Made by a program: the position numbers and the translations under genes. The notes under the pieces are model-generated. The model saw nothing but the letters and a program-made list of their open reading frames with translations. It was not told where the DNA came from and did not search any database. This document shows, one piece after another, positions 8,747-18,448 of a DNA stretch of 64,000 nt (its first letter is position 1; each line of letters begins with the position of its first letter). The DNA comes from Klebsormidium nitens (Eukaryota > Plantae > Klebsormidiophyceae): contig DF237348.1 of NCBI GenBank assembly GCA_000708835.1, forward strand, positions 1-64,000, written 5' to 3'.

Positions 8747-11700
8747 TTAGATCCGGCTCAGGGAGCCCTCGTCTTTTACCACTTGGGGCCTCCCTTCTAC
8801 GAGTCCGAGCATCTCCACGTTGCCCTCGTCATTGTCATCGATGTCGTCCACGTCATCCGTCTTCCACGTGGACTCATCCTGGATCTCGTAGATCGGCAGG
8901 GCGGTTCGAGCATCGGGTTGTGACGACCTGCAAGCGGACACGGAAGAGAACGATTCTCAACGCGTACGCCCCAGGAGCAAAAGATGCGGTTGGAACGGCA
9001 GACGCGATACTGGAGTGCCGTGCATTTGTACACCAAAGCAGAAATGCACATTGCGTAATTGCGCTCCAAAATTCGACAAAGGTTGGATGGTATTGTGCTT
9101 TGAGTGCTTGATGAGATGGTACTTTTGGAAGGGGGCCCTTTTCCGCTGGAAGGCACGTACGTGACCCTATTTTAAGGGACTTGACGAACAACCTTCACAT
9201 ACGTGTAGCTGACACTGCAATCTGCTCGTTAAATGTATGTAGGAAGTCCAGGGACACAAACGGCATTGAAGCTTCAGAACGAGGCTTCCGAGCAAGATGT
9301 CCAAGTGACGGCTTGCTGTCTGGGCGGGCCTTATAATTGCAGAAACTTCGACAGCCTTTAGGTTTGTTCAGGTAAAGTTTCGTAGAGTAATCGGATCGTC
9401 TTGCCTCTGCCCAATCTCCATTCGTTACAAAGTGTTTTCTGGCTGTGTGTGAGGCAAGGCATGAAGCTTCAATGGCCGAAACGTCAAAGCGCAGTTCATA
9501 GACCGCACACTGCGTTTTGATAAAGCGGAAGACTTGGCGAGTGACGACAGGGTCACATCCCATCCGAATCTCCCCACCCGGAAAGTCGATAGGGACTGTT
9601 GTCGGCCGCCTTACCCAATAAGGTTATAGTCGCCCGCAAGATCGTCGGTGTTGACCAGCTCTACTCTTCCGATGGAGCACAGAGCAAACCAGTCAATACT
9701 AAACCTCAAAACCCCCAACCCACGAAGTAGTAGAGGACCACAATCGGCCGCCTTACCCAATAAGGTTGTAGTCGCCCGAAAGACTGTCGGTGTCGACCAG
9801 GTGTACTCTCCCGGTGGAGCAGCGGTAGAGCGTCCAGAGCAGGCCGAAGAGCAGCGCACCGCAGATGGAGGCCAGGCCCAACACGAAGAAGTGCGCGCCT
9901 ATGTGCCAGCCCATGCGGTCCTGCGGGTTAAGAATAACGCAAAATTCAGGTACGACATCGAAAACTTCGAAACGCCTGTGGGTAAAGCTTAGGCAAGGGA
10001 CGACTGATCCGAACGGGAGGCGTTCGACGTCTCTAGGGCAGGCACCAAGTAATGCAGCTTTTTGCAGTTTGTACTGGGATTACATTTGAAAGACGAGCAT
10101 GAAAACGAGTAAGCTACATCATTCGTCCATAATCGCAGAGCTGTCGCACTTGCTGAATATGCTGCGGCCTACGAGTGTAGGATGTCCGCGCAGTGAAAGT
10201 GAACGACAGGAGCCAGGGCCGCCTGCACTTCAAAGATGCACTCGCTCCAGCAAGGGCGCCACCCCACCGGCGCATTCCCGCAAGATCCGTCATAGAAGCG
10301 CGAGCGCTTTCTTACAAACTGCGAGGTGTTCAGAAGGAGATTCAAAAAGGGGGTTGTTACTACGGGTCAATTCACACCGAAGGGGGCGCGTTCTCACCAG
10401 CGCGAGCTGCGTCCCGCCTTGCACCAGAAGCGCCAGCGTGGCATTGGTCCCGAAGAGCAGCGCGAACCGGCCGTTGGGAACTAGAGTGGCGGATTGCGCA
10501 AAGACGAGGCACAGGAGCATCTGCGCGATGCCAGCTGTCAGGATGAGGCTGATATAAGCGGTCCCCAAGCTCTCAATAAGCAGAGCCCCAACCGCTACGA
10601 CGCCGATAATTAGAGATCCGCCGAAGTAGGCCCAGCCGCCGTTACGCGCGACCGGGGCGGCGAGCTTGATGGCGATAAGCGCGCCGACGGCCGATAGGAT
10701 ATGGACGATGTTGATAGCGTATTGGTTGAAGAAGGCGTCGGGGGAGACCTCGGTGAGGAGGTCTGGGGCGTAGTTAAGGAGGGACGCGTTGACGGCGCTA
10801 GCGAAGATCCACCTGTCGACAACAGGGACTGCCTTAGCAACACTACTTTTTGCAACGTATATTACCCTTCAAATCGAAATGGCTTACTTAGTTTCGATTC
10901 GGACACTTCCTTATGTCGGCTTGGTCGCAAAGTTGCATCCCTTGCACCAAGCTCCATCTCTATGCGAGTCCGCACGATGGCACTTATGAGTTGACTGCTG
11001 CCAAGTGATACATGCCACTTTCGACGTCGAGCAAAAGGACGACCCACAACCGAGAATGTAAATTATAAGATACCACCGAGAACGACCATGGACAAAGTCT
11101 GTCGGAAGCTCACCAGAACGACAAGATGCACACTGGCAAGTTCTTGTACACTGCAACGAACTCGCCCAGAAGGCCCTGCAGTGGAAAAGCAGAGCCTCGA
11201 TATTCTGTGGCCGCGTGGCAGCGCAGGAGTCCTTCGTCACGTGTCTTCAGCTTCTCATCGCACTTCTCTTCGACCGGTTTGTACCGGCCGGACCTCGGGT
11301 TAGTATCTTTTCCCCGACCCAGTCTCAAGAAGTTTAAGCGACCACCGAATCGCGAAAGGGCTTATGATTGCGAGGCGACAACCTCGAACTCCGGCCTTCA
11401 GACTCACGGGCACACGCCCGGCCGGCCCTTGCCTGGTGAAAAGATTCACCATTACTCCTTACAAGAACTCAAGCCCCTCCGTTACTGTGGCAGCCCAAGA
11501 ATGTTCAAATCTCGAACTGGGCAATTTCGGACGGTTCGAAAGCGGACTTCTTTTGGGTGTCCGAGTATTGTCGCGTGCGTACCTCCCGTCCGAAGAAGCC
11601 CCGGAGGGGCAGGCGTGCGGAGTTGTTGCGGTCGCCCTTAGTGCGGTCCATTTCGTCACGGACCGGGTCCTGGGGTAGCAGCGAGGCCACAAACGCAGCG

Positions 11701-14700
11701 AGGAGCATCTGCAAAATAATGAAGGTATTTTCTGCCTGAGATCGACCAGAAAGCCCCAAAATTTTCGTCCGGAACAGTGAGAAATGAGAAGATCAGAAAA
11801 CTGTAGGGACATACAAAACGGACCGGGTCTTGAGGTAGCAGCGAGGCCGCAAACGTAGCGAGGAGCATCTGCGAAAGAAGGAGCTCGTTCCGCGTTTGAT
11901 ACTGAACGAATTTCCCTACGCTCTCCAGCTAAACAAAGCAAAAGAAGAGCCACAAACGCAGCGAGGAGCATCTGAGAAAGAGGGAGCGCGTTCTAGGGCT
12001 GATACTGAACGAATGCCACTACGCTTTCTCCCCAATACCAAGCAAACGAAGCCGCTAAGGGCATTTTGAACCTGGGGTCGACCGGAACGTGCTAGCATTT
12101 CGCCCGGAACGGAGAATGAGAAGATCAGGGCAGCGCAGCGATATGCAAAACCAGAATGAAAGACGAAGCTTAGAAGACAAACATTCGATGCAATCTGTAA
12201 GGGCGTCAGAAGCCGAAAGGACCGCCAAACGAAGCTCAGTGCCAGCATTCTGAAAGGCGCCAGAATCGAAGTGGTGGCAGGAGCGTGGACCTACCGATCC
12301 CAGGGGCAGCCATTGGATTAGGACGTCCGGCATAAAGAACTGCATCAGCTGGCCTGCACGCGTCCAAAACGCCCGGATTAGGAAACAGGCCTTGGATCTT
12401 CATTGTCAAGATAAGAAGCTGTCAACATATCCCTGTGCGGAAAACAGGCATAAACAGGCAAACTTTTTGACAAGAGCAAAGGCGTCCTGAAATCTGTGTC
12501 GCGATAAGCAGCGTCCAAACTTGTTCGTCAGATACCAAGCGAACGAGAAAGAGCGCCAAGAAGGGAACATTGAGAGACTGCAATTAAAGTGAAAGAGTCG
12601 AAAATTTCGTTGTCGCAAAAGCAAGCTTTTGAAACATATAGCAATAACAGCTGCCCGGAAATACCGAAAATTTGAGCCTGTCACGTCGCACTCACTGATT
12701 GCGGCAGCTCCGACGACTCCGAGCGCGCTCGCGGCCACGACGACGCTCGTTGCTAGCTGGAAGTGGCGCTCGGCCACGTGGAGGAACAGGAAGGCCACCA
12801 AGATGACGTCAGCAGCGGCACCGATGCCGTACTGGATCTGCGAGAAGTGAGGCCGGTCTCAGCGAGAATAAAGGGTCTCAGCAGCAGAGTGCAACGTTCA
12901 GGCTGCAGGGTGTTCATTTCTGCGGTTCCTGTTCGCTTCTGGGCAGACTGTCGACGAGCAGCGACACATATTTAAAACGGGTTTTGCAACTGGACGGAGT
13001 GCCTGGCTACCTTTCCTTCTTTTTAAGTAGCGTAGATTTAAAGATGCTGGCAGGCAAGTCAAAAGTTGCACGTAGAGTAGAGTGATGCTCCATATCCGTT
13101 GCTAGCAAGAGCCCCGTAGGGTTTCTTGTAGGGTCCTCTTACAACTCGACAACCACCAACAGAGCGAGGTCCATTCGCGAACCTAGGTTGGACCTGAGTG
13201 GCTGCAGACTATCGGTCCGATTGTGTCACAAGCAAGCACCGCATAGTGTTCCCGGAGAACCGACTTTCAGCACATTGACACCGCAAAGGCCACGTGGCTC
13301 CGCATGGGAGCTTGGGATTTACCTGGGCGGCGGCCAGGGGCATGCCGAACAGCAAGACCAGTTGGATCAGCACCCGGGCAAACGCGCCTGCAACAAGAGC
13401 ACAAACAGCTTCAGACTGCACACTTTGAAACAACTGCATTTCTTCCGAAGTCGTCACATCTCAGATGATTAAGTCCTTCTTAATTTCTTATTGATTCATT
13501 CGGAAACCTGCATTGGAATGCGTTGGAGCAGGTTCGTCCAGCTGCCAGCATCCTAAGACCGGTGGGGACATCAGCATATGTGTAGCTCGTGGTGCAGTGT
13601 CCTTGATATAAGAGGACCGGAAATGAGCACCTCTCGTGCACTGGCTGGTGCACCTGCTAATTCAATGACTGAAACCTCTCAAGGCCCTGCCAAAGAATGC
13701 TAGAAGACTTCCAAGTTTCTCACATACAACATGTTACACAGAAGTGACCTGACAACTCTGCATAACGTGTCGTTTCGCGAGTGACGACTGCCTTAACGGA
13801 ACTAGGGCCCAATTCCCCGATACTGATGTGCAAATCGTTAGCAGAAGCTTCGGGTTCTCAAAACAGGGAAACGCGGCCGGCAAGTCGATAGCAGAAGCTT
13901 CGGAACCTGGTCAAACAGGGAAATGCAAGCCGGCGCTTACCAATAGACACGACGGTCTTGTAACCAAAGAGCTCGGCGATGGGCCCCGCAACGGCAGTGC
14001 ACACGAGGGTGGAGTAGAAGCTGATGGGGAGCCCCTTCAGAATCCACTGCGACTGTAGCAGAGAAAAGAGAGGGATGATTACACTGTTTGACCAAAAACG
14101 AAGCGAAGCCGTTCATTCCAAGCGAATAGAAGGCTTCTGGAGCCACAGTGGCTGAGTGCGCGGGTCTCTTTCGCAGTCAACTGAAAGCTCCGAGGGCTCT
14201 TTTGAATGTTCTGTTCATTCCACGCAGCCCCTTCGACTCAGTCTAGTTAGTAAGGTGGGACCCGTCCTTAAAAGCTTTGCAGGACATACGGATGTGAGGA
14301 TATGTGTGTTTTCAAGGCTGCCCAGGTTAAGTATGCCCACTATGTGTTATACTGGTAACTCTGATACAGTATCGACTGGAGATTGTCTTGAGATACATAA
14401 GCCCCGGGCACGTCAACAACAAACCTAACCCAACTATTACCTGCTCCGCACCTGCACCTACCCTCACCTTCAAAGTAACCCCGCATGTTCCCCAGGTGCT
14501 GATATTAAAACAATTGGCCCTTAACACAATCGAGATTTAGTGGAGTCTACGTAATTGAGAGGAGCCTTTCCTTTCAATCAGCCCATGCGCATCAACCCTT
14601 GCCTTTTATTTCTGCACCCAGGCATCCCGACTGCAGCGCTGACCAAATAACGCACTGGAAACAAAAAGCGGGCACCTTTCCTTTCGCACATTGCCCACTC

Positions 14701-16465
14701 CACAGGACCGAAGAAGGAGTCCGACGTCTGCTTCTCTCCCAAAGAAAATAAGGAAGGAGCGTTCACATACCACGGGCATGTTCTGGCCCTCCTCTGACAT
14801 CGGCGCTGACGGTGTCTGGTCCACAGCACTCCCCGTGCCCTCCCCTGCCGCTGGCGTCTCCGTCGAGACTTCTGGTGCTGGCGTGGGGGGTTCAGGTGCC
14901 GGGGTGGGAAGCTCTGGCTCGGGGGTAGGCATCTCTGGTTCTGGAGTGGGCATCTCTGGTTCAGGGGTAGGGAGCTCTGGCTCGGGGGTAGGGAGTTCTG
15001 CTTCTGGGGTGGGGAAGTATGGTGCATCGGTGGGGATTTCAGGAGCAGGGGTAGGGAGCTCTGGGGCTGGGGTAGAGAGTTCGGGGGCCAGGGTAGGGTT
15101 CTCCATCTCCGGGGCGGGGGTAGAGAGTTCCGGTTCAGGGGTCACCACCGGCGCCGCCGTGGCTTGGGGTGCGGCAATTGTCTCTGTCGGAGTGGGGGCC
15201 AGTTCCTCGGGGGTCAGCTCGCGGACCTTCTGGACCCAGATTGCGTTGATGTACGGCCAGTCGATGATGGGAATGAACTCGATCGCCATCTTGTGGTTCT
15301 TGACCGAGTAGAAGGTACCGAAGTTGGCGTTGTTCATGGGGCCTCCGCCCCTCGTGATCAAGTCCACGAAGCTCCACTCCGTCGGCTGGCCGTTGATCGA
15401 CACGTTGAACACGCGCTGCCCGGGGGCGGTCCAGTACCCCTCCGAGGCGTAAAAGGTGATCCAGTACGCGCCGTCCTCGAGCGGCGGCATCTGGTAGACG
15501 ATCGGGCCGAACCGCCCCAACGTGTAAAGCGGCGCGTCGTTGGTGCCTTGGACGGTGTACGTGCCGTCAAGTGTTTGCTCGGTGAAGTTCATTACGCCGA
15601 TCCCGGTGCCCTCCATGTAGTACGGCTCATCGCTCACAAACTTGCGCCCGTCGGAGTCGAAGTACGGCTCCGAGTCGACGGGCTCGCCGCAGTTGATCCC
15701 GATGGAGCTGACGTAGTGCAAGGGCTCCGCGACCGTTTCTTCTGTCGGGGCAGGGGTGGCTGTTTCGGGAGCAGGCACCGTGCCTAGTTCTCCCACCTTC
15801 TGCAGCCAGATGGCGTTTATCTTCGGCTGGTCAACCAGAGGCTGAAGGGAGATGACCATTTCGTTGTCGAAGACCGACTGCTGGAGGGTCAGGTCCAGTG
15901 CCATTCTTGCCCCCCCCGACTGCAGAAACAGGTCCACGCTGCTCGCGGTGCTGAGCGTGTCATCGACGTACACGGCGAAGATGCGCTTCCCCGGCTCTGT
16001 GTACCAGGCCTCCGTCTCGTAGAGCGTGATCTCATACACGCCGTTCTCCAGGTTTGGGAAGTTGTACACGACAGGGCCGAAGCGCTCCCTCACGTACAGA
16101 CCCTGGTCGAACGCGCCTTGGATCTCGAACCCGTCCGTGAAGCTGAAGTCGCCGATGTTTTGCTCAGTGTCCGTGCCTGGGGCGAGGTAGTTCAGGTCGC
16201 TGACAAACGTGCGGCCGTCTGACGCGACATAGACCGTGCCTGCTGGCTCCCCGCAAGTGATGCCAACTGACGTGACAAGCTGGGGGAATGCTTCCTGCAA
16301 ACCGCGTGTAGAGCGGTTGCTGGGGTGTGAGGCGCCCGGGAACCAACCGACCGGGCGCTCAAAGGGGTCCACTTCCTGCTGGGGGGGTCGCGCTTGGAGC
16401 AGGAAAGCGAAGAGGGCCGCCAAGAGGATGAAGCGGACGGTCCCCTTGTCCAAATACGACGCCAT
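8747..16465 (-). CDS. SLC19 (reduced folate/thiamine carrier)-like transporter with two malectin domains and a Pro/Glu/Thr stalk inserted after TM1; ~1006 aa
   Basis: Hand-built exons: 16465-14771, 14052-13941, 13387-13323, 12837-12696, 12353-12295, 11708-11583, 11175-11114, 10812-10398, 9920-9757, 8927-8747. All GT-AG and phase-compatible, total 3021 nt. SLC19-like segments include LFAFLLQARP, LPISFYS...AELFGYKTVV, QYGIGAAADV, SFWWIFASAV..LLNY and GRFALLFGTNATLALLVQ. The exon 3/4 junction is ~3 aa shorter than recalled human SLC19, so a microexon may be missed. Confidence 0.8.
14875..15130 (-). repeat. Coding 21-bp tandem repeat (PEPELPT/PAPELPT-type heptads, mucin-like stalk)
   Basis: Translation TPAPELPTPAPEIPT...TPEPELPTPEPEMPTPEPEMPTPEPELPTPAPEPPTPAPE in ORF 14606..16495. 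Confidence 0.9.
15227..16279 (-). other. Two tandem malectin-like domains (15797-16279 and 15227-15716)
   Basis: Each has (I/V)GI(T/N)CG...SDGR(T/K)FVSD...LY..(E/G)RFGP(V/I)VY..P.LE(N/D)G.Y.IT.Y..E..(Y/W)T.PG.R(I/V)F.V...VDL...GG...P.INAIW(L/V)QK, the malectin pattern. Confidence 0.9.
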
Positions 16466-18448
16466 TGGGGAGGCTAGAGGGTGGAGGGTCGGCACGGGAG
16501 GAGAGTGGTAAGGTCAGGAGCTTTAGGGGTGGCGAGCAAACCTGGGGAAGGAGAAAGTGGGGTTAAGTTGGTGCCTAACTTCACAGTCTTGAGAGAGAGG
16601 AGGTTGGTGATACAGGCACCTTTTAGATATTCAGGTTGTGAGATCCCTCTATCAAAGGAAATTACAGCAGGTGACATCACTCATGTAGTTTTTAACACCT
16701 TAATGCACAAAGCCATGTCAATATTCTGCAGGGAGCAGGCACTTGCAGAATCGACATTGTCAGGAGCCCAAACACGAGAGCTTCACTCGCTCGATCGAAC
16801 TTTTGAAAGTACTTAGGTTTGAAGTGACCACCGGATGCAGGAAGTGCCGAAACTGGGCGGGAAAGGGCATCTAAGAGCAACTGGAACTTGAAGGAAAATC
16901 TCAGACAGCACCAGGACTCTTAGGGTTGGAAATAGGTGGTTTTAAGGACTGTACTGACCAGTTTCACCAAAAAGCTTGGCGACATGTCAATTGCAAATAT
17001 TCAAAATAGACCCTCAAGCACATAACTTTGTGTTTTCAGTGCTCTCTGAATATTCAAGTGGCAGGCTCTAGACCTGGAGTCATCACTCATGAGGCACAAG
17101 CAACAATGCATTATGCTCCATGCTATGCGACCAAGAGAATCAGGAGGAAAATCAGCTCTTTCCACTTAGATCTACAGATGCAGAAGATAGTCAATCTGTC
17201 AGGTGTTCAAGCAGGGGCTCATGGGATCTTAGCTTACAAGGTGAAGTTACACTCGGCTCAAAGGCATCTGTTTGGCAGCCTTTCCATCCCACAACACTTG
17301 CTTGTATGATCACTCAGAGAATTTCTCAGGTTGAGTACCTGACCAGCAAGCCAGACCTCCAGCGATGGGCTGGATGCTGGGCCTTCCTTTTGGGTTCTAT
17401 TTAATGTCCTAGGTGGATGCAAGGACCAAGGATGTGTGCATTTGATCTGGTTCAGTAGAGATCTCACAGTTTGAGCATCGCACCCGAGCGCATTCTGTCC
17501 CTTATCTTTCCCTTGAAAGAAACCTTTTGGGGGGGTATTGACTCTCAGCACTAAGGGCAAAGCGGCTTACCTCCTTTGAAGTGAAAAGCTCTCTTAACAG
17601 GGTTCCCCTTAAAATGCCAGCCCCTAGATCCAATGCATTGTCCTCAAAGGCAGCAGGAGCAGCGTTCAAAGCAGCTCCCTTTTCGTCCACACTTCTTTGA
17701 CCACCTCTTCGGAACTTTTAGAGCTCTGCGAATCCTTGGGAGGAATGCACCTCTATTCAATTTCTAGGCGCAGCATTGCATCTCTCCAGTGCTCTGCTGG
17801 TGCTGTTGACAGAGCCTGAGGCCCAGGGCAGAGCCGGTCCCTGTCTTTCAGGTGGTCACGTCAGAGTACGGGTAATCCCCTGATTTTACGGCAAGGGCGT
17901 GGGGTAAGGTATAAAGGCAGTGTCAAAACTCAAAGTATGATGGTGGTATGTAAACGGTTGACACTGTTTTCACATTTCTGCCAGGTAGTGAAGTGGCGGG
18001 AGATTCCGATCAGCTCGTGCAGGCGGAAAATCCGGGATGGAAGGATTGAACTCAGTCACTCAGAGTGGTAATGGTGACGCGTAACCATTAACGTTTTCTC
18101 GCCGCAACGAGAGCGAGGGCCACATGATGAAAAGAAGGGGACAAAGTTCAACCAAAACTTCAGGAGGAGGGGGAGAAGAACTTGGAAGTTGGAGGAGGAG
18201 GAGAAAGGAGCAGCTTTCGAGTGCTAACGCCTGCTTCAGATCCTGTTTCTGTCCTTTGCTTAGTTCAGGTTTCCAAATCGATGCACAGATTTTGGAGCTG
18301 CTGGCACCATTAGAGAAACCAGTCATTGAAGCGAACTGTGGGCAGTGAGAAAGAGGTATTGCAAGCTGAAGCTCTAGATTCCCATTGGAAGACTCCCTAG
18401 TTTTAGAGAAACTTCTCACAACCGGTGGTGGTTGCCTCGTAGAAAGTC

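What the first reader, a model, noticed from the sequence alone, without database searches (positions are those of the whole stretch)
8747..16465. SLC19-like vitamin carrier with two malectin domains and a mucin stalk inserted in extracellular loop 1 (candidate transceptor)
Seen in sequence: the malectin ORF begins VRFILLAALFAFLLQARPPQQEVDPF. This aligns without gaps to human SLC19A1 TM1 as I recall it (LVCYLCFYGFMAQIRPGESFITPY; shared F..Q.RP and the later P-aromatic pair). The exon ends GQNMPV at a gtatgt donor (14770) in phase 0. The next transporter exon starts in phase 0 at 14052, giving QNMPVSQWILKGLPISFYS, collinear with recalled KNFTREQVTNEITPVLSYS. I found no other TM1 candidate in the 718-nt intron. 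About 525 aa (malectin x2 plus a Pro/Glu/Thr stalk) therefore replace a ~4-aa spacer in loop 1. Established: SLC19 loop 1 is extracellular, and malectin domains bind glycans or sit in plant cell-wall receptor kinases. Inference: a wall- or glycan-sensing module is coupled to folate/thiamine-type uptake, or tethers the carrier to the wall or to microbial glycans. I do not know of this architecture, but I could not search.
Basis: partly seen in the sequence, partly recalled or inferred. Interest (0 to 1): 0.9.

Follow-up and report, generated by a model that had tools for sequence, protein, structure and literature searches.

The report
Vitamin-type carrier with built-in lectin domains
In this streptophyte-like alga, one spliced and well-expressed gene encodes an SLC19-type (thiamine/folate family) membrane carrier with two sugar-binding malectin domains on a proline-rich stalk inserted into its first outside loop; I found this domain combination in no database or paper, and what it does is still untested.

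Summary
Assembled transcripts from four RNA runs (four studies) all carry the 14771/14052 junction: a 718-nt GT..AG intron in phase 0. They run in one contig from the malectin exon through seven transporter exons.

The joined reading frame gives a 1006-aa protein:
- an N-terminal helix;
- two Malectin domains (Pfam E 2e-16 and 3.5e-13; fold model TM 0.73 to human malectin);
- a 7-aa-repeat Pro/Thr/Glu stalk;
- TM2–TM12 of a Folate_carrier/SLC19-like MFS protein (E 4e-73 against a profile of streptophyte homologues, starting exactly after TM1 and loop 1).

Two orthologous loci (dS about 0.5 and 1.2) keep all ten exons, their lengths and phases, and full ORFs.

The N-terminal 54 residues are as constrained as the transporter core (dN/dS 0.015–0.10). 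They align without gaps to SLC19 TM1 (F..Q.RP…P-aromatic). This favours a retained TM1 over a cleaved signal peptide.

The four basic folate-binding residues are absent, and an Asp sits at the thiamine-Glu/folate-Arg position in TM4.

No other protein with this architecture turned up, and no paper describes it. The "transceptor" idea has no support, because there is no cytosolic signalling domain. The function of the lectin module is inferred, not shown.

The parts
17573..17827 (-). 5' UTR exon. Its 3' end at 17573 is exact; its 5' end is approximate, taken from the 222-255 nt of contig beyond 16543.
   Evidence: The loose end of the transcript contigs at 16543 maps uniquely at 17573-17602. 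This implies a 1029-nt intron at 16544-17572.
14771..16543 (-). Exon 1: the rest of the 5' UTR plus codons 1-565 (ATG at 16465). It encodes TM1, the proximal part of loop 1, Malectin 1, a linker, Malectin 2 and the stalk.
   Evidence: It is contiguous in the transcript contigs of 4 runs. There is an in-frame stop upstream of the ATG. The orthologues P0001 and P0002 align over its whole length.
16379..16447 (-). Residues 7-29, the putative TM1 / signal anchor (KGTVRFILLAALFAFLLQARPPQ). The F..Q.RP motif is in gapless register with SLC19 TM1.
   Evidence: - Hydropathy peak at residues 5-25; helix 7-24 in the AF2 model.
- hhalign puts it on the TM1 columns of the streptophyte SLC19-like alignment, P = 0.015.
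- Removing the insert in silico adds 15.1 bits, and 0 of 300 shuffles reach that.
- dN/dS is 0.015-0.10.
15761..16288 (-). Malectin domain 1 (residues about 60-235).
   Evidence: - Pfam PF11721: E 2e-16, 60.8 bits against a cut-off of 23, covering profile positions 4-163 of 163.
- AF2 model pLDDT 90.5.
- Foldseek: human malectin 9ikp with TM 0.73, and the ANX1/2 and FER ectodomains with TM 0.72-0.75.
15218..15715 (-). Malectin domain 2 (residues about 251-416).
   Evidence: Pfam PF11721: E 3.5e-13, 50.3 bits against a cut-off of 23. dN/dS is 0.15-0.27.
14771..15217 (-). Pro/Thr/Glu/Ala-rich stalk (residues 417-565), with a 21-nt (7-aa, PTP[A/E]PE[L/M]) tandem array at 14871-15098.
   Evidence: - TRF: period 21, 10.9 copies.
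- Composition: P 29%, E 17%, T 15%, A 12%, with 26 [TAS]P dipeptides.
- Copy number varies among the orthologues.
- No Pfam family.
14053..14770 (-). Intron 1: 718 nt, GT..AG, phase 0. Its removal joins the stalk to TM2.
   Evidence: The joint 14052/14771 is present in 4 of 4 RNA runs, with 113 nt on the shorter side. The donor, acceptor and phase are conserved in L001 and L002. The intron holds no TM1-like frame.
13941..14052 (-). Exon 2 (TM2: SQWILKGLPISFYSTLVCTAVAGPIAELFGYKTVVSIG).
   Evidence: It aligns to profile positions 61 onward.
13323..13387 (-). Exon 3 (TM3).
12696..12837 (-). Exon 4 (TM4-TM5). It contains Asp634 at the hRFC Arg133 / hSLC19A3 Glu110 position.
   Evidence: Pfam Folate_carrier matches the enclosing frame.
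12295..12353 (-). Exon 5 (start of TM6).
11583..11708 (-). Exon 6 (TM6 and the cytosolic loop).
11114..11175 (-). Exon 7 (end of the loop, start of TM7).
10398..10812 (-). Exon 8 (TM7-TM11).
   Evidence: - The 5' junction is seen in RNA.
- Pfam Folate_carrier: 33.5 bits against a cut-off of 27.
- The GTGAGA donor at 10397 is conserved and the exon is 415 nt in all three loci.
9757..9920 (-). Exon 9 (TM12 and the start of the tail). It is inferred, not read from RNA junctions.
   Evidence: It is conserved with AG/GT boundaries and an identical length of 164 nt in L001 and L002. It keeps the frame. The transcript contigs extend at least 1205 nt beyond 10750.
8747..8927 (-). Exon 10 coding part (acidic C-terminal tail and stop codon). 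It is inferred from orthology.
   Evidence: All three loci end ...VVKDEGSLSR[I/V]*.

Best explanation
This is one gene for a 12-helix SLC19-like (Folate_carrier family) MFS carrier. Its first extracellular loop has been expanded from about 15 to about 535 residues by two malectin (carbohydrate-binding) domains carried on a Pro/Thr/Glu repeat stalk.

Shown:
- The mRNA is spliced in frame from the stalk into TM2.
- The whole arrangement is conserved and under purifying selection in three related taxa.

Inferred:
- The conserved N-terminal helix is the family's TM1. It acts as an uncleaved, N-in signal anchor, so the lectin module faces outward and TM2 re-enters the membrane.
- TM1 and TM2 both belong to the N-terminal bundle, which moves as a rigid body in the rocker-switch cycle. 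A large insert between them can therefore be tolerated, as in the STP10 lid (and the SLC22 ectodomains, from my own knowledge), and the carrier still transports.
- The substrate is a small, probably cationic or neutral, vitamin-like molecule rather than folate. The basic folate-binding residues are missing, and acidic residues sit at the hRFC D88 and R133 positions.
- The stalk, which probably carries O-linked glycans, holds the two lectin domains away from the membrane. There they bind a glucan or glycan of the cell wall, the extracellular matrix or neighbouring microbes. This would tether or position the carrier, or modulate its access to substrate.

Confidence by layer: about 0.95 for one gene and one mRNA with this architecture; about 0.8 to 0.85 for a retained TM1 with the insert in loop 1; about 0.4 for the tethered, working-carrier mechanism. 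The single figure given is a blend of these.
For: Gene structure:
- in 4 of 4 RNA runs, one contig of 2.5-3.9 kb (3.8-3.9 kb in three of the runs) joins exon 1 (16543-14771) to 14052-13941. In three of them the same contig carries all seven downstream GT..AG junctions; the shorter X1 contig shows most of them.
- 20 runs from 7 studies hold 0.67-0.77 of the sampled words, which is close to the exon-only fraction.
- there is an open frame across every junction, giving 1006 aa.

Conservation:
- orthologous loci L001 and L002 have the same 10 exons, lengths and phases, with full ORFs of 996 and 985 aa.
- dN/dS is 0.015-0.10 for residues 1-54, 0.035-0.065 for TM2-6, 0.15-0.27 for the malectin domains and 0.15-0.20 for the stalk.

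Domain identity:
- both malectin domains pass the Pfam cut-off, and the fold model matches malectin and the CrRLK1L ectodomains.
- residues 571-937 match positions 61-425 of a 437-position profile of streptophyte SLC19-like proteins, so only TM1 and loop 1 are missing from the downstream exons.

TM1:
- the N-terminus aligns to the TM1 columns.
- hydropathy gives TM1 plus ten further clear peaks. TM11 falls below the threshold but aligns in the profile.

Other:
- the mapping to hRFC residues.
- GC3 is uniform (0.79-0.92 in the insert, 0.81 in the carrier), so the insert is an old, integrated part of the gene.
- PMC8154325: STP10 has a lid domain between TM1 and TM2, and PepT1/2 have ectodomains. 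These are precedents for extra domains in MFS outside loops.
Against: - The sequence similarity of the N-terminus to TM1 is modest. On its own it scores 1.7 bits against the profile, and a random upstream frame scores 1.1. hhalign gives P = 0.015 only.
- The hydrophobic run is 12-13 residues followed by Q-A|R-P, so signal-peptidase cleavage cannot be excluded from sequence alone.
- The TM1 Glu that contacts substrate in hRFC and hSLC19A3 is Gln29 here.
- The aromatic clamp Tyr113 of hSLC19A3 is Leu, so thiamine itself is not assured.
- No full-length structure could be predicted.
- No ligand, localisation or transport data exist.
- The last two exons rest on orthology, not on RNA junctions.
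- Contigs cannot reveal minor isoforms or internal transcription start sites.
Confidence: 0.6

Rival explanations
1. The N-terminal segment is an ordinary cleaved signal peptide. The mature protein would be an 11-helix membrane protein with a free N-terminal lectin ectodomain. The MFS part would then lack TM1 and might not transport.
For: The hydrophobic core is short (FILLAALFAFLL), with a positive n-region and Ala at -1 before Arg-Pro. The stand-alone profile score of the N-terminus is weak.
Against: - Residues 1-54 are 91-98% identical among orthologues whose malectin domains are 56-65% identical in the distant pair. Their dN/dS of 0.015-0.10 equals that of the TM core, whereas signal peptides normally drift.
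- The family motif F..Q.[RK]P...P-aromatic is kept in register.
- The profile match of the downstream exons begins exactly after TM1 and loop 1.
- Bona fide SLC19 TM1 helices have an equally short apolar run before the RP motif.
Confidence: 0.12
2. The carrier half no longer transports. It serves as a polytopic membrane anchor for a wall-binding lectin, acting as a wall-to-membrane linker.
For: The canonical substrate-contact residues have diverged (Q29 for the TM1 Glu, L637 for the clamp Tyr, and no Arg/Lys set). A lectin plus stalk resembles wall-associated proteins.
Against: The TM helices are the most constrained part of the gene (dN/dS 0.035-0.065 in TM2-6), including the charged intramembrane residues E592 and D634. 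A mere anchor would not need 12 conserved helices.
Confidence: 0.1
3. It is a transceptor: glycan binding by the ectodomain is signalled to the cell, or it gates transport allosterically.
For: In land plants, malectin-like ectodomains sit on the receptor kinases FER and ANX, which are structural neighbours of domain 1. The insert lies directly over the extracellular gate.
Against: No kinase or other signalling domain is present. The cytosolic loop is about 45 aa, and the roughly 85-aa acidic tail has no Pfam hit. Nothing here tests gating.
Confidence: 0.08
4. These are two separate genes (a secreted di-malectin protein and a transporter with its own start) joined by assembly artefact or read-through.
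For: The exon-1 ORF can run on for 54 codons past the donor. The read-laying output itself warns that a contig across two genes does not prove a single transcript.
Against: - The joint is a canonical in-frame GT..AG intron inside the ORF, and it is identical in 4 runs from 4 studies.
- Exon 2 has no Met and no TM1.
- Intron-1 reads are at depth 2 against 236 for the spliced contig.
- In L002 the unspliced frame stops 3 codons after the donor, so no anchor or conserved tail exists.
- The junction phase is conserved in three taxa.
Confidence: 0.02

Closest known systems
SLC19 / reduced folate carrier family (Pfam PF01770; human SLC19A1-A3; streptophyte 'thiamine transporter 1-like' proteins of Selaginella, Coleochaete and Mesotaenium)
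   Same: Residues 571-937 align to TM2-TM12 of the family (E 4e-73 to the streptophyte profile). That profile hits human SLC19A1/A2/A3 structures at E about 1e-70. TM1 keeps F..Q.RP...PF in register. The acidic residue at hRFC D88 is kept (E592).
   Different: - About 520 extra residues lie in loop 1, whereas all homologues found are 357-481 aa.
- The closest full-length homologue is only 37% identical in exon 8.
- The TM1 Glu is Gln.
- hRFC R133, R157, R373 and K411 are D, V, A and V here.
- hSLC19A3 Y113 is Leu here.
Malectin (ER lectin; PDB 2k46, 9ikp), CBM57-type bacterial modules, and the malectin-like ectodomains of CrRLK1L kinases (FERONIA, ANXUR)
   Same: Both domains pass Pfam Malectin. 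The domain-1 model superposes on human malectin (TM 0.73) and on ANX/FER (TM 0.72-0.75). An aromatic pair at the position of malectin's ...EVYF... (WY and YW here) stays aromatic in all three orthologues. That this pair is part of the sugar-binding site is from my memory.
   Different: The domains are not on a type-I ER protein, a glycosidase or a kinase; they sit inside a transporter loop. Sequence identity to any outside protein is at most about 29% over both domains, and the nearest are bacterial multi-domain proteins.
MFS transporters with extra domains in outside loops: the plant STP10 lid (TM1-TM2), SLC22 OCT/OAT ectodomains (TM1-TM2; my own knowledge), PepT1/2 Ig-like domains (TM9-10) and the SV2 luminal domain
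   Same: A folded module is inserted in an extracellular loop of an otherwise standard 12-TM MFS. STP10 and SLC22 use the same TM1-TM2 loop (PMC8154325).
   Different: Those inserts are 50-200 aa and are not lectins. Here there are two lectin domains plus a stalk of about 150 aa, roughly 520 aa in all, which is larger than the carrier's own N-terminal bundle.

Membership tests
SLC19 / Folate_carrier (PF01770) MFS carriers | A significant match to the family profile above the curated cut-off. | tested here: met
   Exon-8 frame: 33.5 bits against a cut-off of 27, E 2.6e-8. Exon-4 frame: 20.4 bits. The full model against a profile of 7 streptophyte family members: 232.7 bits, E 4e-73. Those members score 167-212 bits on PF01770.
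SLC19 / Folate_carrier (PF01770) MFS carriers | Twelve transmembrane helices in two six-helix bundles. | tested here: inconclusive
   Hydropathy gives TM1 (5-25) and ten clear peaks in 569-921. TM11 aligns to the profile but falls below the hydropathy threshold. No full-length structure could be predicted, because a spliced protein has no reference for the tool.
SLC19 / Folate_carrier (PF01770) MFS carriers | TM1 with the family motif (F..Q.[RK]P.E....P-aromatic). | tested here: inconclusive
   The register and F21, Q24, R26, P27, P34 and F35 are kept. The gain is +15.1 bits against a shuffle maximum of 13.1, and hhalign gives P = 0.015. But the Glu is Gln29, and the stand-alone score is only 1.7 bits.
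SLC19A1-type folate carrier | Basic substrate-binding residues (hRFC R133, R157, R373, K411). Their role is from my own knowledge of the hRFC literature. | tested here: not met
   By transfer through the two profile alignments, the equivalents are D634, Val, Ala and Val.
SLC19A2/A3-type thiamine carrier | Glu32 (TM1), Glu110 and Tyr113 (TM4) contacting the aminopyrimidine ring (PMC11447181). | tested here: inconclusive
   The Glu110 position holds Asp634, so it stays acidic. The Glu32 position holds Gln29, with Glu31 two residues on. The Tyr113 position holds Leu637. Asn297 and Glu320 were not mapped.
Malectin domain (PF11721) | Profile match above the cut-off, and the malectin beta-sandwich fold. 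| tested here: met
   Domain 1 scores 60.8 bits and domain 2 scores 50.3 bits against a cut-off of 23. A profile including both domains hits malectin PDB chains at E 4e-22. The AF2 model has pLDDT 90.5. Foldseek gives 9ikp at TM 0.73, E 3e-10.
Malectin domain (PF11721) | Carbohydrate binding. | not testable with these tools
   Only the conserved aromatic pair (W154-Y155; Y-W in domain 2) was seen.
Transceptor / receptor | A cytosolic signalling or effector domain. | tested here: not met
   The C-terminal tail frame has no Pfam family (protein 6). The cytosolic loop is about 45 aa and the tail is about 85 aa and acidic.

The most novel reading that the evidence does not exclude
The lectin module is not a passive tether. 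Glycan binding over the extracellular gate would couple the state of the cell wall or of a microbial partner to vitamin or metabolite uptake. That would make it a ligand-gated MFS carrier, an algal counterpart to the malectin-like wall sensors of land plants but built on a transporter instead of a kinase.
Probability: 0.1. Interest if true: 0.85.

Novelty: new variant of a known kind. Interest (0 to 1): 0.6.

Why it matters
Both halves belong to well-known families. A lectin pair built into the first outside loop of an SLC19-type carrier was found neither in about 5.8 billion clustered proteins searched from the malectin side, nor in 1.84 billion representatives searched from the carrier side, nor in the paper library. 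It is expressed, spliced as predicted, and kept under selection across species that differ by dS of about 1.2.

It gives three things:
- a natural test of how large an insert the TM1-TM2 loop of an MFS carrier tolerates;
- a candidate physical link between the cell wall or matrix glycans and nutrient uptake in a lineage close to land-plant ancestors, where malectin-type wall sensing later became attached to kinases;
- a warning for annotation, because ORF-based gene callers split it (P0001 and P0002 are exon-1 calls only).

Tried and rejected
- AF2 of the whole exon-1 product with 3 sequences gave pLDDT 39.6 and was unusable. A domain-1 alignment with 16 rows worked instead.
- phmmer of single pieces against PDB sequences found nothing relevant. 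Profiles were needed.
- Pfam on the N-terminal 55 aa alone gave no Folate_carrier hit.
- The stand-alone profile score of the N-terminus (1.7 bits) is no better than a chance upstream frame (1.1 bits). Sequence similarity alone does not prove TM1, so the argument rests on register, conservation and the missing-piece logic.
- A search for a hidden TM1 exon in intron 1, the 5' intron and 1.4 kb upstream found none. Intron 1 is conserved with L001 only near the splice sites.
- A foreign or recent origin of the insert is rejected, because GC3 of the insert equals that of the carrier.
- The first homologue search was swamped by stalk low-complexity words and was repeated on the malectin region only.
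- A full-length structure prediction and full-length database searches were not run.
- Earlier scan notes near this place: none.

Full report
**1. What is in the sequence**

On the minus strand, a 629-codon ORF (16495-14606) contains an in-frame stop followed by ATG 16465. It reads MASYLDKGTVRFILLAALFAFLLQARPPQQEVDPF.... Pfam finds Malectin (PF11721) in it (E 3.3e-29, two stretches). Each half passes the curated cut-off on its own: 60.8 and 50.3 bits against a cut-off of 23.

The last 149 residues of the exon are 29% Pro, 17% Glu, 15% Thr and 12% Ala. They include a 21-nt (7-aa) tandem array at 14871-15098.

Downstream frames carry Folate_carrier (PF01770) matches: 33.5 bits against a cut-off of 27 for 10868-10293, and 20.4 bits for 12858-12409.

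**2. RNA evidence**

Twenty RNA runs from seven studies hold 0.67-0.77 of the sampled words of 13900-16500, which is close to the exon-only fraction. Four of these runs, from four studies and two organism labels, were laid on 10750-16700.

- Every run holds a transcript contig (3.8-3.9 kb in three runs, 2.5 kb in X1) that runs 16543-14771 | 14052-13941. In three runs the same contig then continues through 13387-13323, 12837-12696, 12353-12295, 11708-11583, 11175-11114 and 10812 onward. The shorter X1 contig covers most of these.
- Every skipped stretch is a GT..AG intron.
- The contigs go on for at least 1205 nt below 10750, and for 222-255 nt above 16543. The upper part maps to a 5' UTR exon ending at 17573.
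- Intronic contigs exist only at depth 2-3.7, against 236 for the spliced contig.

**3. Gene model**

Joining the exons keeps one frame throughout. The last two exons (9920-9757 and 8927-8747) were placed by GT/AG sites and orthology.

Hydropathy shows a peak at residues 5-25, nothing in 26-568, and then ten clear peaks in 569-921. TM11 is weaker but is aligned by the family profile.

**4. Relatives**

The malectin exon has two close relatives in the protein collection, P0001 (80% identity) and P0002 (55%). Both are ORF calls on genomic contigs. Their loci are L001 (a Logan assembly) and L002 (a JGI metagenome).

- Both loci carry all nine downstream exons with identical lengths (112, 65, 142, 59, 126, 62, 415, 164 and 181/178 nt) and AG/GT boundaries.
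- The exon 1/2 junction is phase 0 in both.
- Full ORFs of 996 and 985 aa result.
- In L002 the unspliced frame stops three codons after the donor, so the malectin exon has no alternative conserved ending.

Pairwise dS is about 0.5 (window against L001) and about 1.2 (window against L002). The table gives dN/dS by segment.

| Segment | dN/dS |
|---|---|
| Residues 1-54 | 0.015-0.10 |
| TM2-6 | 0.035-0.065 |
| TM7-12 | 0.10-0.22 |
| Malectin domains | 0.15-0.27 |
| Stalk | 0.15-0.20 |

All parts are under purifying selection. The N-terminal segment is as constrained as the carrier core.

**5. Is the N-terminus TM1?**

A phmmer scan of 1.84 billion representatives with exon 8 found only 26 relatives. 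The full-length ones (357-481 aa) come from Coleochaete, Mesotaenium, Selaginella and Vanilla, and some are named 'thiamine transporter 1-like' or 'folate transporter 1'. They score 167-212 bits on PF01770.

- A profile of seven of them matches model residues 571-937 at profile positions 61-425 of 437 (E 4e-73). The downstream exons therefore lack exactly TM1 and the start of loop 1.
- With the insert removed in silico, the alignment extends to profile position 17 and gains up to 15.1 bits.
- Segment-wise and full shuffles of the N-terminus (300 each) gain 3.8 ± 2.0 and 3.5 ± 2.0 bits, with maxima of 13.1 and 12.5. None reaches 15.1.
- hhalign of the three orthologous N-termini against the homologue alignment picks the TM1 columns (residues 9-40 against columns 25-56, P = 0.015).
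- The same gapless register holds against human SLC19A1: F21/F37, Q24/Q40, R26/R42, P27/P43, P34/P50, F35/Y51.

Caveats remain. On its own the N-terminus scores 1.7 bits, no better than a chance upstream frame at 1.1 bits. A Q-A|R-P signal-peptidase site cannot be excluded. I put the retained-TM1 reading at roughly 0.8 to 0.85. That figure rests mainly on the conservation pattern, the register and the missing-piece logic.

**6. Where the insert sits**

P574 aligns with hRFC P70 and F35 with hRFC Y51. So hRFC residues 52-66 (15 aa of loop 1) correspond to residues 36-570 here, a net gain of about 520 aa. K7 and R11 lie before the helix, which fits an N-in orientation with the lectin module outside. 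This is inference from the positive-inside rule.

**7. The lectin module**

- A profile that includes both domains hits malectin structures at E 4e-22 and FERONIA at 5e-15.
- An AF2 model of domain 1 (pLDDT 90.5) matches human malectin 9ikp (TM 0.73), the ANX1/2 and FER ectodomains (0.72-0.75) and the C-terminal sugar-binding domain of Bacteroides GH2 enzymes.
- The aromatic pair aligned with malectin's ...EVYF... is WY in domain 1 and YW in domain 2, and it stays aromatic in all orthologues. That this pair is part of malectin's sugar site is from my memory.
- Outside the two orthologues, the nearest proteins are mostly metagenome-derived (one named bacterial, Dehalococcoidia) multi-domain carbohydrate-active proteins, at 25-30% identity where most of the region aligns. 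None carries PF01770 or an MFS domain.
- GC3 of the insert (0.79-0.92) equals that of the carrier (0.81), so the insert is long integrated.

**8. Substrate clues**

Residues were transferred through the two profile alignments.

| Reference residue | Residue here |
|---|---|
| hRFC D88 | E592 |
| hRFC R133 / hSLC19A3 E110 | D634 |
| hRFC R157 | Val |
| hRFC R373 | Ala |
| hRFC K411 | Val |
| hRFC E45 / hSLC19A3 E32 | Q29 (E31 lies two residues later) |
| hSLC19A3 Y113 | L637 |

The roles of E32, E110 and Y113 in thiamine binding are from PMC11447181. The roles of the hRFC basic residues are from my own knowledge. Folate is therefore unlikely. A cationic or neutral vitamin-like substrate is plausible but open.

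**9. Mechanism (inferred)**

TM1 works as an uncleaved signal anchor, and the lectin-plus-stalk module is translocated before TM2 re-enters the membrane. TM1 and TM2 belong to the same rigid bundle in rocker-switch transport, so a large loop between them need not block the cycle. Precedents are the STP10 lid between TM1 and TM2 and the PepT1/2 ectodomains (PMC8154325), and the SLC22 ectodomains (my knowledge).

The stalk has 26 [TAS]P dipeptides, which are AGP-like glycomodules by plant knowledge, so it is probably O-glycosylated and extended. The two malectin domains would bind a glucan or glycan of the wall, the matrix or neighbouring microbes, and so position or tether a working carrier.

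There is no cytosolic signalling domain, so 'transceptor' is unsupported.

**10. Novelty**

- From the malectin side (candidates of 346-1100 aa, with precomputed Pfam domains listed), no hit has PF01770 or MFS_1.
- From the carrier side (no length limit), no hit is longer than 526 aa.
- No paper in the library holds malectin together with SLC19. Among the listed papers that hold at least two of malectin, folate carrier, thiamine transporter, folate transporter and major facilitator, none mentions malectin.

There are limits.

Earlier first-stage notes in the same genome mention secreted tetra-malectin/AGP-like proteins and a separate SLC19-type gene. These are possible sources of the two halves, and I did not check them.

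**Verdict**

This is a real, expressed and conserved new domain architecture of two known families. The reading that the insert sits in loop 1 is well supported. The function of the insert and the substrate are not established.

Noticed in passing
window 9608-9679 (minus), inside intron 9: A second copy of the 3' end of exon 9, including its GTAAGG donor (GRVELVNTDDLAGDYNLIG against the exon's GRVHLVDTDSLSGDYNLIG). With an upstream AG it would form a 51-nt in-frame cassette. L001 has the copy too.
   Followed up: partly
window 14871-15098; the same part of P0001 and P0002: The stalk is a 21-nt tandem array of about 11 units. Unit number differs among the orthologues (PTP count 9, 9 and 4) and there are indels in the alignment. 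It behaves as a length-variable spacer.
   Followed up: yes
window 14378-14417: In run X11, one contig matches only these 40 nt of intron 1 and continues into unrelated sequence on both sides. This is probably a short dispersed repeat.
   Followed up: no
L001 3543-3914 and L002 2694-3077: A synaptobrevin/longin gene lies about 6-7 kb upstream of the malectin exon in both orthologous loci. L001 also has Utp11, UbiA and DnaJ-like calls. The neighbourhood is syntenic between the two relatives. It was not checked in the window.
   Followed up: no
P0001 and P0002 (protein collection): Public ORF-based gene calls for the relatives stop at the end of exon 1 (601 and 547 aa, 'hypothetical protein'). 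No full-length model of this gene or its orthologues was found in the collections searched.
   Followed up: yes
window 11148-11555 and 14467-14732: Run X1 holds low-depth contigs (3.7 and 2, against 236 for the spliced contig) inside introns 6 and 1. This is pre-mRNA-level intron retention, not an alternative isoform of note.
   Followed up: partly
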